DNA of 64,000 bases, from NCBI RefSeq assembly GCF_947568905.1, contig NC_079168.1, positions 29,884,001 to 29,948,000 of the forward strand, given 5' to 3'. Made by a program: the position numbers and the translations under genes. This DNA comes from Ostrea edulis. Lineage: Eukaryota. The stretch's first letter is position 1; every line of letters begins with the position of its first letter. Below are positions 5,281-13,471 of the stretch, piece after piece. Under the pieces are notes generated by a model, which saw only the letters and a list, made by a program, of their open reading frames with translations, did not search any database and had not been told where the DNA came from.

Positions 5281-5774
5281 AGTAAGTGCGTAAATTTCTC
5301 CCCCACGTATAATTGTAAATATTTGATATGATAAATATTATACACAGTTACCGCGTATTTTACCCCACGTGTGATGTTGGACGTATAAAATCGCGTATTT
5401 AACCCCCAACGTAAATAACCACGTTTATATTATAAGATTCATGCGGATACTGAAAACGTACGATATAATTTTATAAAAATAAATTTTCGGTCATTCTATA
5501 TAGACAAATTCGAAAGATCGGTAAAGTTGGCTACTAGTAACCAGCTACTAGTAACTGGCTACTTAAAAAGAGAAAAGTTGGCTACTAGTAGCCAACTACT
5601 TAAACCAGGAAAAGTTAGCTACTAGTAGCCAGTTACTAGTAGCCAGCTACTAAAAGTAAGAAAAGTTAGCTACTCGTAGTCAGCTACTACAAAATATAAA
5701 AGTTATAATTACTGATAGCTCGCTACCAGAAAAAGGTTAATGAGTTTGAAAATTATTATCTATCAGATTTATTT

Positions 5775-5868
5775 GTGTGTCCAGGGGTCCGTGTTTGCCC
5801 AACTGTCTGTTTTGTATTGCTTTTGGGGGGGTTGTGAGATTGATCACTGTTCGTTATCTTCACCTTGC
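5775..5868 (+). mobile_element. 94-bp PLE 3'-end insertion in the left foldback arm
   Basis: GTGTGTCCAGGGGTCCGTG...TTCACCTTGC interrupts TATCAGATTTATTT|CTAAAGAGG. The mirror position in the right arm (about 13195-13210) is uninterrupted. ATTT is duplicated on both sides. Confidence 0.8.
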
Positions 5869-6029
5869 ATTTCTAAAGAGGACGAGGAGTCGTATGAAAT
5901 TTCATGCTCAATTATCCCCAATTACATAACGTTGCAATGCAAAATACGAATAAACTTTTTCAACTGAGTGTTTACTTTAAAAGTGAAACGGATTGAATTC
6001 AGACCTTCAATCATTTGATATACCATCCA

Positions 6030-8917
6030 TTTTGAGATATCTGCTACTTTTACAATTTGATTCGAGTTACCTTGAAATTTCAACATAAGTGTGAATACCG
6101 TAAGAAACTTTATGTTTGTATTAGATATCTGACGAATTTACGACTATACATATGGCAAAAAGTGATAGATGGTGTTTTAGTACGCCACGAATTTTCAGAT
6201 ATCGCTCTTTAGGAAATCAGTTACTTATACATTTTGATTATCGGTACAATGAAATTTCAAGATCCGTGTGAATACCATAAAGAACTCCGTGTTTATATCA
6301 TATATTTAACTAACTTGCAACGATACGTATGGCGAGTAGTGATATTGGGTATCGTGATATGTCATCAATTTTCAGATATCACCCTTAAGGAAGTCAGCTA
6401 CAAATACCTTTTGATGGCAGGTAAACTGAAATTTCAAGTTTTTCGCAAATATCTTAAGGAACTCTGAGTTTGTATTAGATATCTGACTAATTTACAATTA
6501 TCAAAGTGAAGAAGAGTGATATTAGGTATCTTGACATGCCATAAATTTCCAGATATCACGCTTAAGGAAGTCAGCTACTTATACCTTTTGATTCCTGGAA
6601 TCCTGAAATTTCAAGTTTTTCAAAATATCTTAAAGAATTCTGTATTTGCATTAGATATCTCACTAATTTACAACTACCCACGTGAAGAGGTGTGATATTA
6701 GGTATCTTGATATGCCATCAATTTTCGGATATCATACTTAACGAAGTAAGCTACTTATACCTTTTGATTCCATGTAACCTGAAATTTCAAGTTTTTCATA
6801 AATATCTTAAAGAACTCCTTGTTTGTATTAGATATATGACTAATTTACAACTATCCATGTGAAGTGGAATGGTATTAGGTATCTTGATATGCCATCAATT
6901 TTCAGATATCACCCTTAAGGAAGTCAGCTACTTAGCTTTTGATTGCAAGTAACCTGAAATTTCAAGTTTTCTACCAATATTTTAAGGAACTCTGAGTTTG
7001 TATTAGATATCTGACTAATTTACAATTATTAAAGTGAAGAAGAGTTATATTAGATATCTTGACATGCCATAAGTTTTCAGATATCATCCTTAAGGAAGTC
7101 AGCTACTTATACCTTTTGATTGCAAGTAACATGAGATTTCAAGTTTTCTACCAATATTTTAAGGAACTCCTTGTTTATATTAGATATCTGACTAATTTGC
7201 AATTATCAAAGTGAAGAAGAGTGATATTAGATATCTTGACATGCCATAAGTTTTTCAGATATCACCCTTAAGGAAGTCAGCTACTTATACCTTTTGATTG
7301 CAAGTAACATGAAATTTCAAGTTTTCTACCAATATTTTAAGGAACTCCTTGTTTATATTAGATATCTGACTAATTTGCAATTATCAAAGTGAAGAAGAGT
7401 GATATTAGGTATCTTGACATGCCATAAGTTTTCAGATATCACGCTTAAGGAAGTCAGCTACTTATACCTTTTGATTCCTGGTCACCTGAAATTTCAAGTT
7501 TTTCATAAATATTTTAAAGAATTCTGTGTTTGTTTTAGATATCTGACTAGTTTACAACTATCCATGTAAAGTGGAGTGGTCCTAGGTATATTGATATGCC
7601 ATCAATTTTCAGATATCACCCTTAAGGAAGTCAGCTACTTATACCTTTTGATTGCAAGTAACCTGAAAATTAAAGTTTTTAGAAAATATTTTAAGGAACT
7701 CCGTGTTTGTTTTAAATATCTGGTTAATTTACCAATGCACATATGACAAAATCTGATATTAGGAATCTTGATATGCCATCAATTTTTAGATATCATGCTT
7801 AAGGAAGTCAGCTACTTATACCTTTTGATTCCTGGTCACCTGAAATTTCAGGTTTTTCATAAATATCTTAAAGAACTGTGTATTTGTATTAGATATCCGA
7901 CTAATTTACAACTAAATATGTGAAGAAGTATGACATTAGGTATCTTAATATGCCAACAATTTTCAGATATCACCCTTAAGGAAGTCAGCTACTTATACCT
8001 TTTGATTGCAGGTAACCTGAAAATTAAAGTTTTTAGAAAATATTTTAAGGAACTCCGTCTTTGTTTTAAATATCTGATTAAATTACCAATGCACATATGA
8101 CAAAATCTGATATTAGGTATCTTGATATCACATCAATTTTTAGATATCACGCTTAAGGAAGTCAGCTACTTATACCTTTTGATTCCAGGTAACATGAAAT
8201 TTCAAGTTTTCTACCAATATTTTAAGGAACTCCTTGTTTATATTAGATATCTGACTAATTTACAATTATCAAAGTGAAAAAGGGTGATATTAGGTATCTT
8301 GATATGCTATAAGTTTTCAGATATCATGCTTAAGGAAGTCAGCTACTTATACCTTTTGATTCCTGATAACCTGAAATTTCAAGTTTTTCATAAATATCTT
8401 AAAGAACTCCTTGTTTGTATTATATATCTGACTAATTTACAACTATCCATGTGAAGTGGAATGGTATTAAGTATCTTGATATGCCATCAATTTTCAGATA
8501 TCACCCTTGAGGAAGTCAGCTACTTATACCTTTTGATTCCAGGTAACCTGAAATTTCAAGTTTTTCATAAATATTTTAAAGAACTCCTTGTTTGCATTAG
8601 ATATCTGACTAATTTACAACTATCCATGTGAAGTGGAGTGATATTAGGTATCTTGATATACCATCAATTTTCAGATAGATATGTAAGATATCTGACTAAT
8701 TTATCTTTGCCGTTATTACAGGGCTTTATATGAAGTGTCTTGATATGCAATCAATTTTCAGATATCACGTTCGACGAAGTCAGCTACTTATACCTTTTGA
8801 TTCCAGACACCCTGAAATTTAAAGTGTTTTGTATATAGCTTAAGGAACTCTGTGTTTGTGTTAGATATCTGATTAGTAAACTACTATCCACGTGAAGAGG
8901 TATGATAATAGGTATCG
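6030..8917 (+). repeat. 177-bp satellite array, left arm (about 16 monomers)
   Basis: The CTTAAGGAAGTCAGCTACTTATACC anchor recurs at 6561, 6737, 6914, 7089, 7267, 7444, 7621, 7798, 7975, 8152, 8329 and 8506 (modal period 177). Confidence 0.95.
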
Positions 8918-12201: not shown

Positions 12202-12205
12202 TAGG

Positions 12206-12240
<35 letters not shown>

Positions 12241-12963
12241 ATTCATACCATTCGATTCGATGCACCGATTACAAATTCCGGATTTCGGTTCGGTTTAGAT
12301 TTTACTTACACCAAAACAACAAATATGGCGTCCGAGTGATGTTGAAAACATGTGGTTTTTTATGCAACAGAGATTTAAATCACTACTGTGTTAAGTTAGC
12401 ATTTTCACCACTCAGATACCAACAGAATATGGTCCGTAAGATCATTGTAGTTTATCTTTACATGACATAGCATTTCTGTTAGTGGTGGAGTGAAATTAAA
12501 TTAACATCGTAGGTAATGACACAGATTTGACAGTTAACATGAGAGAAGTAAATCAATAAAGGAGAGATTTTCAAAGACTCTCAATTGATAGAATTGTTGA
12601 ATTTTTGCATATCAATGAAAACAATATCATATACATTTTAGATTCACTATAGATTTGTTTAATAATCCAAAACTTATGCAGCACATTAATATAACAAATT
12701 TTGATAGACTGTCAGTATTTTCCTTTTTTCTATCAAAGTTATAAAATGCCATTATGAATAGACATGATGTTTACAAATGACAACATATAGTTATATAACT
12801 TGAATTAAATCAAATCAAATATGCTACTCATTAAAATTGTTAATTTTTGTGGTGTCATTAGATAAATTGGACCTAACATGAACCGAATCGAAAATAACCG
12901 AACCGTGCTGTTCTGAATCGAAACCGAACCGAATCGAGCTGACCCTGAATCGTCCCAGCCCTA
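12202..12963. mobile_element. hAT-type MITE (762 bp) inserted in the right foldback arm
   Basis: Termini TAGGGCTG...CAGCCCTA with a perfect 8-bp TSD TTTCTTAC (12194-12201 and 12964-12971). Sub-terminal AACCG/CCGAA arrays. Absent from the mirror site in the left arm (about 6100). Confidence 0.9.
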
Positions 12964-13471
12964 TTTCTTACGCTATTCACGCTTATGTTGAAATTTCAGG
13001 GTAACTCGAATCAAATTGTAAAAGTAGCAGATATCTCAAAATGGATGGTATATCAAATGATTGAAGGTCTGAATTCAATCTGTTGCACTTTTAAAGTAAA
13101 CACTCAGTTGAAAAAGTTTATTCGTATTTTGCATTGCAACGTTATGTAATTGGGGATAATTGAGCATGAAATTTCATACGACTCCTTGTCCTCTTTAGAA
13201 ATAAATCTGATAGATAATAATTTTCAAACTCATTAACCTTTATCTGGTAGCGAGCTATCAGTAATTATAACTTTTATATTTTGTAGTAGCTGGCTACGAG
13301 TAGTTAACTTTTCTTACTTTTAGTAGCTGGCTACTAGTAACTGGCTACTAGTAGCTAACTTTTCCTGGTTCAAGTAGTTGGCTACTAGTAGCCAACTTTT
13401 CTCTTTTTAAGTTGCCAGTTACTAGTAGCTGGTTACTAGTAGCCAACTTTACCGATCTAAACTCGAATGGG

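What the first reader, a model, noticed from the sequence alone, without database searches (positions are those of the whole stretch)
5515..13458. 7.9-kb spacer-less foldback transposon whose arms are head-to-head satellite arrays
Seen in sequence: the two ends are reverse complements, with about 5 mismatches in the outer 260 bp by eye. The flanks form a 9-bp TSD (AAATTCGAA / AAACTCGAA). Each arm runs from a short-repeat outer domain (GCTACTAGTAGC-type mini-palindromes) through ~270 bp of unique sequence into 16-18 monomers of a 177-bp satellite. The arms meet with only a 2-nt loop, and there is no coding capacity. Established: a 9-bp TSD plus modular, internally repetitive long TIRs is the architecture of Drosophila FB and sea-urchin TU foldback elements, usually linked to Mutator-like transposases. 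Bivalve satellites are mostly described as carried by Helentron/HINE elements. Inference: this is a mobile satellite palindrome moved as one unit by a MULE-type transposase, a route for satellite dispersal that may be undescribed for this family.
Basis: partly seen in the sequence, partly recalled or inferred. Interest (0 to 1): 0.9.

Follow-up and report, generated by a model that had tools for sequence, protein, structure and literature searches.

The report
Oyster foldback transposon carrying satellite arrays
This is a real 7.9-kb mobile DNA element in a flat-oyster genome, made of two inverted arrays of a 177-bp satellite capped by near-identical ends; it follows the known foldback-transposon design and shows that oyster satellites can also be spread by a vehicle other than Helitron-type elements.

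Summary
Window 5515-13458 is a spacer-less palindrome.

Anatomy:
- The outer ~500 bp of the two arms are 97.8% identical.
- Each end holds six copies of the 12-nt palindrome GCTACTAGTAGC.
- The arms carry 17 and 20 monomer units of a 177-bp satellite in opposite orientation.
- They meet at a 7-bp/2-nt micro-hairpin at 8917/8918.
- An 8/9 matching 9-bp duplication flanks the element.

Evidence that it is a genuine transposon insertion and not an assembly artefact:
- The arms differ in monomer order.
- Each arm carries its own later nested insertion: a 94-bp repeat fragment on the left and a 762-bp hAT-type element with a perfect 8-bp duplication on the right.
- Contigs from three further studies carry the left junction.
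- The terminus is high-copy and, in other copies, ends at exactly 5515 against unrelated flanks.
- In a homologous Ostrea edulis GPR157-like locus the two flanks are adjacent.

It fits the foldback class (Drosophila FB, Tetris, nematode Tm1). The 9-bp duplication points to a Mutator-like transposase, but I could not examine any autonomous partner.

Satellite dispersal by foldback elements is already known from Tetris. I found no such description for bivalves. The monomer has a related block in C. gigas CgiSat15, which has no transposon assigned.

First-stage notes of this scan list similar elements elsewhere in this genome; none has been checked. Verdict: a new member of a known kind.

The parts
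5506..5514 (.). Left copy of the 9-bp target-site duplication (AAATTCGAA)
   Evidence: Abuts the first base of the TIR and matches the right copy at 8/9. The unique flank has single-copy depth in four runs.
5515..5705 (+). Left outer domain: terminus AGATCGGTAAAG... followed by about 1.9 copies of an 88-bp unit (37 + 51 bp) holding six GCTACTAGTAGC-type palindromes. Putative transposase-binding array.
   Evidence: TRF. Motif scan: 12 of 13 window hits lie in the two outer domains, against 0.75 expected. 98.1% identical to the right end. Summed contig depth is roughly 10^3 times that of the flank, and in run X17 ten contigs have loose ends before 5515 with no consensus.
5706..6014 (+). Left non-repetitive 'neck' of the TIR (5706-5774 and 5869-6014), interrupted by the nested insert
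   Evidence: Matches R 13057-13267 at 97-98%. The only match to the monomer is an 11-mer that is not significant.
5775..5868 (+). Nested secondary insertion: a 94-bp 5'-truncated piece of a super-abundant dispersed repeat, flanked by ATTT/ATTT
   Evidence: Absent from the right arm. Contigs in all four runs skip it, giving the joint 5770>5869. Other copies lie in the window at 3406-3499, 1773-1857, 366-443, 62666-62750 and 24597-24688.
6015..8917 (+). Left array of the 177-bp satellite, 17 units (L01-L17). The two outermost units are a distinct divergent type.
   Evidence: TRF period 177. Monomer map and identity matrices.
8910..8925 (.). Axis of the palindrome: AGGTATC-GA-GATACCT, lying on a natural imperfect micro-palindrome of the monomer (AGGTATCTTGATATGCC in the consensus)
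   Evidence: Sequence and monomer consensus. The exact axis words occur in three runs of the probable source sample. A near-identical axis contig occurs in run X2 (8829-8935, 3 differences) at multi-copy depth.
8918..12201 (-). Right array of the 177-bp satellite (R01-R20, inverted). R07, R08 and R14 are truncated, and R20 is split by the hAT-type insert.
   Evidence: TRF and monomer map.
12202..12963 (.). Nested non-autonomous hAT-type element (762 bp; TIR TAGGGCTG...CAGCCCTA) with a perfect 8-bp TSD TTTCTTAC at 12194-12201 and 12964-12971
   Evidence: Sequence compared with the uninterrupted left arm. It has no other copy in the window.
12964..13056 (-). Outer part of the outermost right monomer (mirror of L01)
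   Evidence: L 5869-6107 matches R 13202-12964 at 97.5%. L01 and R20 are 98% identical.
13057..13267 (-). Right non-repetitive 'neck' of the TIR
13268..13458 (-). Right outer domain with six GCTACTAGTAGC-type palindromes
13459..13467 (.). Right copy of the 9-bp target-site duplication (AAACTCGAA)

Best explanation
This is a non-autonomous foldback (FB-like) cut-and-paste DNA transposon. It inserted as one unit, about 7.1 kb long at the time, 98 bp upstream of the start codon of a GPR157-like receptor gene in a flat oyster (Ostrea edulis or a close relative).

Inferred mechanism:
- A transposase supplied in trans binds the six 12-nt palindromes in each ~190-bp outer domain. The 9-bp duplication makes a Mutator-like or Phantom-type DDE enzyme the most likely candidate.
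- The enzyme pairs the two ends, excises the whole palindrome and integrates it across a 9-bp staggered cut.
- The 177-bp arrays are the inner, expandable part of the long TIRs. They change by unequal exchange, so the arms share monomer subtypes but not monomer order.
- Each transposition seeds a new satellite array in the genome.

After insertion, this copy acquired about 2% arm divergence, one TSD mutation and two nested insertions.

Shown: the architecture, the TSD, the multi-copy termini with a fixed end, insertion relative to a homologous locus, presence in several individuals, and the nested insertions.

Inferred: the transposase family, the role of the palindromes as binding sites, and that the spacer-less palindrome with this axis (rather than a longer precursor) was the transposed form.
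For: - Arms: the outer ~0.5 kb has 11 mismatches in 495 aligned bases, 97.8% identity.
- TSD: 8/9 match at the exact TIR ends.
- Palindromic motif: 12 of 13 window hits lie in the two ends, against 0.75 expected.
- Copy number: summed contig depth over the TIR is roughly 10^3 times that of the single-copy flank in four runs from four studies.
- Fixed terminus: run X17 has 10 contigs whose match stops exactly at 5515 and continues into unrelated sequence (agreement 0.48).
- Left junction in other individuals: contigs 5230-5541 occur in X2, X5 and X17. In X5 and X17 they carry flank SNPs at 5370 and 5409, so other haplotypes hold the insertion.
- Empty homologous site: in O. edulis L001 the right flank (13518-14571) aligns to 9964-10955. 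The best match of the left flank anywhere in the 29 kb lies 38 bp upstream of that, at 9895-9926, scoring 36 against shuffles of 27.1 +/- 2.3 with a maximum of 34.
- Nested insertions are arm-specific, and other copies lack the 94-bp insert.
- An axis-bearing contig in X2 (8829-8935, 3 differences, depth 399 against 10-13 for single-copy sequence) suggests that many copies share this axis.
- Literature: foldback elements with subterminal repeats and 8-10-bp TSDs are mostly Mutator-like (PMC4079207, PMC3169594). Subterminal repeats and a palindromic terminal motif are needed for transposase binding and cleavage in Muta1 (PMC5499845). MULEs are present in all the mollusc genomes analysed, bivalves included (PMC10294476).
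Against: - I examined no autonomous partner or transposase, so the superfamily rests on the TSD length of one copy.
- I retrieved no second full copy. Scans of metagenome, prokaryote-genome and viral collections found nothing.
- I saw no empty allele in the four runs. The homologous empty site is only ~70-82% identical, and the exact target 9-mer is not conserved there.
- The exact axis 31-mers (only 2 sampled words) occur only in runs of the probable source sample.
- The contigs that cross the axis in other runs have fewer than 31 nt on one side, below the tool's own bridging rule.
- The arms are not mirror images inside the outer ~0.85 kb, so the palindrome is old or has been reshuffled.
- The 11-nt match between the outer domain and the monomer is not significant.
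Confidence: 0.82

Rival explanations
1. A conventional member of the same family, with a middle domain or longer arms, inserted here. The spacer-less palindrome and its axis then arose in situ, by a central deletion or by template switching at the monomer's micro-hairpin. On this reading the palindrome itself was never the mobile unit.
For: The exact axis words were found only in runs of the probable source sample. The axis-proximal monomers are the most divergent (59-88%) and are not mirror images. The axis sits on a natural micro-palindrome of the monomer. Another inversion joint (6712|8905, opposite strands) exists in other copies, so axes can differ.
Against: A contig in X2 covers 8829-8935 with only 3 differences. 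By my hand count against a neighbouring left-arm monomer, a tandem continuation would give about 12 mismatches in the 19 bases from 8917. Its depth is about 30 times single-copy, which implies many copies share this axis. Unchecked notes of this scan report other spacer-less 177-bp foldbacks in the genome.
Confidence: 0.12
2. The element is a foldback transposon but belongs to a superfamily other than Mutator, for example Merlin (8-9-bp TSD), a P/Galileo-like family or hAT.
For: [quoted passage not shown] Only one TSD was measured, and no transposase was seen.
Against: From my own knowledge, untested here: a 9-bp TSD is typical of MULEs, not of P (7-8 bp) or hAT (8 bp). The nested hAT-type element in this same element made an 8-bp TSD. 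Merlin is reported as nearly restricted to cephalopods among molluscs (PMC10294476).
Confidence: 0.15
3. Two independent one-ended, satellite-carrying elements of the Helentron/HINE type happen to lie tail to tail.
For: In oysters most dispersed satellite-like arrays are carried by Helentron-derived HINEs (PMC7492417, PMC8268682).
Against: A 9-bp duplication flanks the pair as a whole. The ends are symmetrical 98% inverted repeats, not the asymmetric left and right HINE modules. No host DNA lies between the arrays. HINE arrays are direct repeats between two different flanks, and Helitron-type elements make no TSD (PMC7492417).
Confidence: 0.02
4. An assembly or sequencing artefact: a chimeric fold-back read creating a false palindrome.
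For: Spacer-less palindromes are a known artefact class, and the exact axis words were found only in the probable source sample.
Against: An artefact would give identical arms. Here the arms differ in length (3403 vs 4541 bp), in monomer order and in nested insertions. The two ends share one TSD, and their flanks are contiguous in a homologous locus. The axis words are present in three separate runs of that sample.
Confidence: 0.01

Closest known systems
Tetris / DAIBAM foldback transposon of Drosophila virilis (PMC4079207)
   Same: Non-autonomous. Long modular TIRs with an external non-repetitive flanking domain followed by a variable number of ~200-bp tandem repeats (TIR-220). TSDs of 8-10 bp. 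Its TIR repeats are also found as satellite arrays. No autonomous partner is known, and it was assigned to Mutator by TSD length alone.
   Different: Tetris has an inner TIR domain and a middle domain between the arms; this element is spacer-less. No sequence similarity is known (not tested). The host is a bivalve. The monomer is 177 bp. The outermost domain here is itself built of 12-nt palindromes.
Drosophila melanogaster FB (Foldback) elements
   Same: The arms are made almost entirely of tandem repeats, copies may lack any central loop, and the TSD is 9 bp. The held papers confirm only that Tm1's composite TIRs resemble those of FB elements (PMC3169594).
   Different: FB repeats are short (10-31 bp, from my own knowledge). 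Here there is a two-tier structure of 14/37/51/88-bp subrepeats followed by a 177-bp satellite.
Tm1 Mutator/Foldback family of root-knot nematodes (PMC3169594) and Muta1 of Aedes aegypti (PMC5499845)
   Same: Composite TIRs built of subterminal tandem repeats and 9-bp TSDs. In Muta1 the repeats and a palindromic terminal motif are required for transposase binding and cleavage, which serves as the model for the GCTACTAGTAGC array here.
   Different: Those families have known MULE/Phantom transposases and much shorter TIRs without satellite-sized monomers.
Cg_HINE / Helentron-borne satellite-like arrays of oysters (PMC7492417, PMC8268682)
   Same: They disperse short satellite arrays throughout oyster genomes.
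   Different: They use rolling-circle transposition, make no TSD, have asymmetric flanks with subterminal inverted repeats and a 3' palindrome, and carry arrays in direct orientation. None of these features is found here.
CgiSat15, a 177-bp satellite of Crassostrea gigas (PMC8268682, Data S1)
   Same: Same 177-bp period and same AT content (68.9% against ~69%). There is a shared conserved block: its 16-mer AGTCAGCTACTTGTGC matches 19 monomers here with 2 mismatches, against 0.03 expected. By eye the two are about 70% alike over roughly the first 95 nt.
   Different: They are only distantly similar overall: a 41-nt stretch fails at 3 mismatches. CgiSat15 was listed with no transposon association, and I do not know whether it sits in foldback elements.

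Membership tests
Foldback (FB-like) transposons, structural class | Very long terminal inverted repeats that make up most or all of the element | tested here: met
   The arms are 3403 and 4541 bp with a 2-nt centre.
Foldback (FB-like) transposons, structural class | TIRs are modular and built of tandem subrepeats | tested here: met
   Outer domain of 14/37/51/88-bp subrepeats plus 177-bp arrays.
Foldback (FB-like) transposons, structural class | Target-site duplication of fixed length flanking the whole element | tested here: met
   9 bp with an 8/9 match at the exact ends. Only this one copy was measured.
Foldback (FB-like) transposons, structural class | Multiple dispersed copies with the same termini and different flanks | tested here: met
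   TIR depth is roughly 10^3 times the flank depth in four runs, and 10 contigs in X17 end at 5515 with unrelated flanks. I retrieved no full second copy.
Foldback (FB-like) transposons, structural class | Empty site: flanks contiguous where the element is absent | tested here: inconclusive
   The flanks are adjacent in a homologous O. edulis locus. That locus is only ~70-82% identical and lacks the target 9-mer. I saw no empty allele in four runs.
Mutator-like (MULE / Phantom) superfamily | TSD of 8-11 bp, most often 9 bp | tested here: met
   9 bp. Criterion as stated in PMC3169594 and PMC4079207.
Mutator-like (MULE / Phantom) superfamily | An autonomous relative with the same termini that encodes a MULE DDE transposase | not testable with these tools
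   There is no transposase in the element or the window, and I could not search the rest of the genome. An unchecked scan note (s1-301729) reports a 23.5-kb 'autonomous' foldback elsewhere.
Helentron / HINE | No TSD, and asymmetric left and right modules with subterminal inverted repeats and a 3' palindrome | tested here: not met
   A TSD is present and the ends are symmetrical 98% inverted repeats. Criteria from PMC7492417.
Helentron / HINE | Tandem repeats in a single direct array between the two modules | tested here: not met
   There are two arrays in opposite orientation.
CgiSat15 satellite family (C. gigas) | Monomer sequence similarity sufficient for family membership | tested here: inconclusive
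   Same period and AT content, and one conserved block is shared. A 41-nt stretch does not match within 3 mismatches. I did not compute a full alignment, because the consensus has no reference and I did not retype it.

The most novel reading that the evidence does not exclude
The 177-bp satellite is not passive cargo. Each monomer carries a conserved block, GAAGTCAGCTAC, which is the most conserved 12-mer, is shared with C. gigas CgiSat15 and contains the core of the terminal palindrome. Each monomer also carries a micro-hairpin, AGGTATC-NN-GATA(T)CC, at which arms fold back.

On this reading a break or a stalled fork inside a single arm can regenerate a complete two-ended, spacer-less transposon by template switching at that hairpin. 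Palindromic satellite transposons would then arise repeatedly and spread an old, oyster-wide satellite family by a non-Helitron route.
Probability: 0.2. Interest if true: 0.65.

Novelty: new member of a known kind. Interest (0 to 1): 0.45.

Why it matters
Oyster genomes are used as a model for satellites that are scattered rather than clustered. The published explanation is almost entirely transport by Helitron/Helentron elements. This element shows a second vehicle: a TIR (foldback, probably Mutator-like) family present at roughly 10^3-fold depth, whose arms are arrays of a 177-bp satellite. A satellite with the same period, AT content and a shared conserved block in C. gigas (CgiSat15) has no transposon assigned.

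Large spacer-less palindromes are also fragile sites and potential sources of hairpin RNA. This one appears fixed 98 bp upstream of a receptor gene's start codon, so its effects on genome stability and gene regulation can be tested.

Tried and rejected
- Exact-pattern scans for the terminal 25-mer and for a 22-nt TIR palindrome in metagenome, prokaryote-genome and viral contig collections gave 0 hits. These collections hold no oyster copies, so the blank means nothing.
- I tried to reach other copies through gene calls on satellite ORFs. A protein search with the 173-aa in-frame ORF (9470-9991, - strand) found no homologues.
- The Rfam scan of 5000-14000 gave only sub-threshold miRNA-like hairpin hits, which are trivial consequences of the palindromes. 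There was no hammerhead or other family.
- Pfam scans of the ORFs in and around the element found no transposase.
- I tested whether the satellite derives from the outer domain. The best local alignment is an 11-mer with score 22, against a shuffle mean of 20.2 and maximum of 31, so it is not significant. I kept it only as a lead.
- I tested for strict mirror symmetry of the arms and rejected it beyond the two outermost monomers.
- The second sequencing-run search, on the axis, sampled only 2 words. It is a weak test.
- I could not look for an empty allele directly. The single reads call was limited to 6,000 letters and could not hold both ends. No branch at 5514 was seen in four runs, but contigs show presence, not absence.
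- I did not establish the species. The runs are coded; 'oyster metagenome' runs hold the sequence, and the nearest protein is from Ostrea edulis at 88%.

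
Full report
**1. Observation**

The element spans window 5515-13458 (7,944 bp).

*Ends.* BLAST of the left end against the window shows that L 5515-5774 equals the reverse complement of R 13458-13199 at 98.1%. L 5869-6107 equals R 13202-12964 at 97.5%.

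*Target-site duplication.* The first and last bases of the inverted repeat are flanked by AAATTCGAA and AAACTCGAA. An 8/9 match at a position fixed in advance has a chance probability of about 2e-4 for this AT-rich composition (my calculation).

*Repeats.* TRF finds 14/37/51/88-bp subrepeats in both outer domains. It finds 177-bp arrays in the + orientation up to about 8917 and in the inverted orientation after that. The 12-nt palindrome GCTACTAGTAGC (up to 2 mismatches) occurs 13 times in the 64 kb, six times in each outer domain, against 0.75 expected.

*Axis.* The arms meet at AGGTATC-GA-GATACCT, 8910-8925.

*Coding capacity.* There is none. The monomer is 59 codons long, so short ORFs recur in frame, and one runs for 173 aa. 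None has a Pfam hit above cut-off or any homologue. No Rfam family reaches its threshold.

**2.

*Nested insert in the left arm.* A 94-bp insert at 5775-5868, bounded by ATTT/ATTT, is absent from the right arm. It is the 5'-truncated end of a repeat with several other copies in the window and summed contig depths of 10^5-10^7 in the public runs.

*Nested element in the right arm.* A 762-bp element lies at 12202-12963. It has TAGGGCTG...CAGCCCTA ends and a perfect 8-bp duplication TTTCTTAC. This is the signature of a non-autonomous hAT element (the classification is from my own knowledge of hAT ends and TSD length).

*The arms are not mirror images throughout.* With both inserts removed, in-register identity counted from the outside is 98, 97, 93, 96 and 90% for successive 177-bp steps. 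It then falls mostly to 76-88%, which is the level between arbitrary monomers.

*Monomer structure* (matrix):
- The two outermost monomers are a distinct type, only 64-77% identical to the rest, and correspond across arms (L01-R20 98%, L02-R19 96%).
- The inner monomers fall into at least three subtypes present in both arms.
- A monomer's best partner is often in the other arm (up to 96%).
- There is only a broken mirrored chain: L08-R17, L09-R16, L10-R15, L11-R14, L14-R13, L15-R12 at 92-96%.
- The units nearest the axis are the most divergent.

So the conserved 'head' of the family is the outer domain, the neck and two monomers, about 0.85 kb. The inner arrays have been reshuffled by unequal exchange.

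**3. Is it real, and is it an insertion?**

*Not an artefact.* A fold-back read or assembly artefact would give identical arms. Here the arms differ in length, in monomer order and in nested insertions.

*Reads evidence.* I laid Logan contigs of four runs from four studies on 4900-9100.
- The unique flank 5323-5463 has depths of 134, 12.8, 54 and 50.
- Contigs 5230-5541 in X2, X5 and X17 run from this flank 27 nt into the element. In X5 and X17 they carry two flank SNPs, so the insertion is present on other haplotypes.
- No branch at 5514 that would indicate an empty allele was seen. Contigs cannot prove absence.

*Axis words.* The exact 31-mers across the axis (only two sampled words) are held by three runs of one sample, flagged as the probable source, and by no other listed run.

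*Homologous locus without the element.*
- The ORF starting about 80 bp to the right of the element is the first coding exon of a GPR157-like class-B receptor (Pfam 7tm_2). Its best protein match is O. edulis GPR157-like at 88%.
- The locus of that protein (L001, O. edulis OX387704.1) aligns with the right flank from 13518 onward at 82%.
- The best match of the 215-bp left flank anywhere in the 29 kb of L001 lies at 9895-9926, 38 bp upstream of the right-flank homology. It scores 36 against shuffles of 27.1 +/- 2.3 with a maximum of 34.
- The two flanks are therefore contiguous where the element is absent. This locus is a paralogue or an orthologue of a related species. The 9-bp target itself is not conserved there, so it is an empty homologous site and not a precise empty allele.

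**4. Is it a family?**

- The summed contig depth over the outer domain and neck is roughly three orders of magnitude above the single-copy flank in all four runs. The tool warns that this is not a copy number.
- In X17, ten contigs match up to exactly 5515 and then continue for a median of 255 nt with no consensus (agreement 0.48). Other copies therefore end at the same base next to unrelated DNA.
- Contigs in all four runs join 5770 to 5869, so other copies lack the 94-bp insert.
- At five sites this left arm differs from the family majority. The right arm shares two of these variants and has the majority base at three. This fits two arms of one subfamily copy that then accumulated private mutations.
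- A 107-nt contig of X2 covers 8829-8935 with three differences, at a depth of 399 against 10-13 for single-copy sequence. By my hand count against a neighbouring left-arm monomer, a normal tandem continuation would mismatch at about 12 of the 19 bases from 8917. The contig must therefore carry the inversion junction, and its depth suggests that tens of copies share this axis.
- That contig has only 18 nt beyond the axis, and a second one in X17 has 24 nt. Both fall below the tool's 31-nt rule, so I treat this as suggestive.
- A different inversion joint (6712|8905) is also present in X5 and X17.
- First-stage notes of this scan report further spacer-less 177-bp foldbacks with 9-bp duplications and a 23.5-kb 'autonomous' one in this genome. 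They are unchecked, and I could not read those loci.

**5. Mechanism**

The best-supported reading is a non-autonomous foldback transposon mobilised in trans.

The repeated palindromes in the outer domain are the likely transposase-binding sites. The analogy is Muta1, where subterminal repeats and a palindromic terminal motif are needed for binding, cleavage and excision (PMC5499845).

The 9-bp duplication points to a Mutator-like enzyme. Tetris and Tm1 were assigned in the same way (PMC4079207, PMC3169594). MULEs occur in all the mollusc genomes analysed, bivalves included (PMC10294476). This step is inference: I saw no transposase.

The 177-bp arrays behave as the expandable inner part of the TIRs.

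The most conserved 12-mer of the monomer, GAAGTCAGCTAC (98% mean conservation), contains the core of the terminal motif. It is also the block shared with C. gigas CgiSat15. The 11-nt match to the outer domain is not significant by shuffling, so a binding role for the monomers is only a lead.

The axis lies on an imperfect micro-palindrome of the monomer. This is compatible with origin by template switching or hairpin priming. The low similarity of the axis-proximal monomers shows that any such event is old relative to the insertion.

**6. Rivals**

- In-situ loss of a middle domain after insertion is not excluded (about 0.12).
- A non-Mutator foldback family is possible (about 0.15).
- The TSD and the symmetry of the ends contradict a tail-to-tail pair of Helentron/HINE elements.
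- The asymmetry of the arms contradicts an artefact.

**7. Comparison and novelty**

The closest known system is Tetris of Drosophila virilis. It is a non-autonomous foldback element with a flanking domain, ~220-bp tandem repeats in the TIRs, 8-10-bp duplications and repeats that also form satellite arrays (PMC4079207). The present element differs in four ways: it is spacer-less, its outer domain is built of palindromes, its monomer is 177 bp, and its host is a bivalve.

In five full-text searches of the held library, the oyster and bivalve papers retrieved by the foldback queries use 'foldback' only to cite Tetris. The oyster satellite literature attributes dispersal mainly to Helentrons (PMC7492417, PMC8268682, PMC11136912). 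CgiSat15 is listed there without any transposon. I could not consult Repbase or Dfam, so a curated entry may exist.

I therefore rate it a new member of a known kind, of moderate interest.

**8. Limits**

- I saw no second full copy, no transposase and no precise empty allele.
- The species is not established.

Noticed in passing
window 12194-12971: A non-autonomous hAT-type element (762 bp, 12202-12963, ends TAGGGCTG...CAGCCCTA) with a perfect 8-bp TSD TTTCTTAC is nested in the outermost monomer of the right arm. It has no other copy in the window.
   Followed up: partly
window 5775-5868; also 3380-3499, 1773-1857, 366-443, 62666-62750, 24597-24688: A super-abundant dispersed repeat with summed contig depth of 10^5-10^7 in public runs. 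The copy inside the left arm is 5'-truncated and bounded by ATTT/ATTT, as a retroposed SINE-like 3' fragment would be. A 97.7% identical copy lies in O. edulis L001 at 8410-8711.
   Followed up: partly
window 5027-5280; also 16890-17104, 4555-4685, 63659-63839, 29795-29965: A second very high-copy repeat, GC-rich for this genome, lies just left of the insertion site. Copies also occur in O. edulis L001.
   Followed up: no
window 13556 to about 14100 (+): First coding exon of a GPR157-like class-B GPCR (Pfam 7tm_2; 88% to an O. edulis protein). The foldback element ends 98 bp upstream of the likely ATG, so a 7.9-kb palindrome sits in the proximal promoter or 5'UTR. It was present in all four individuals examined.
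   Followed up: partly
window 13473-13524: A (TA)26 microsatellite lies 6 bp beyond the right TSD. The homologous O. edulis locus has only a short, interrupted AT-rich stretch there. Scan notes mention other foldback families targeting (TA)n tracts in this genome.
   Followed up: no
window 9470-9991 (-) and recurrent 56-aa ORFs in both arms: The monomer length (177 = 59 x 3) keeps the reading frame across monomers, giving a 173-aa ORF through three monomers. It has no Pfam hit above cut-off and no homologues, so it is probably a chance consequence of the period.
   Followed up: yes
window 32411-35930 (-): ORFs with reverse transcriptase, a tyrosine recombinase (Phage_integrase) and a sub-threshold GDSL lipase-like hit, indicating a DIRS-like YR retrotransposon.
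   Followed up: no
window 44142-57798 (-): A 3,382-aa single ORF, followed by an ORF with Vitellogenin_N and open beta-sheet domains: a large lipid-transfer (vitellogenin/apolipophorin-like) gene.
   Followed up: no
L001 1-5691 (O. edulis OX387704.1): Upstream of the homologous GPCR gene lie a THAP + DDE_Tnp_4 (PIF/Harbinger-type) transposase gene and a YqaJ / viral alkaline exonuclease-like gene.
   Followed up: no
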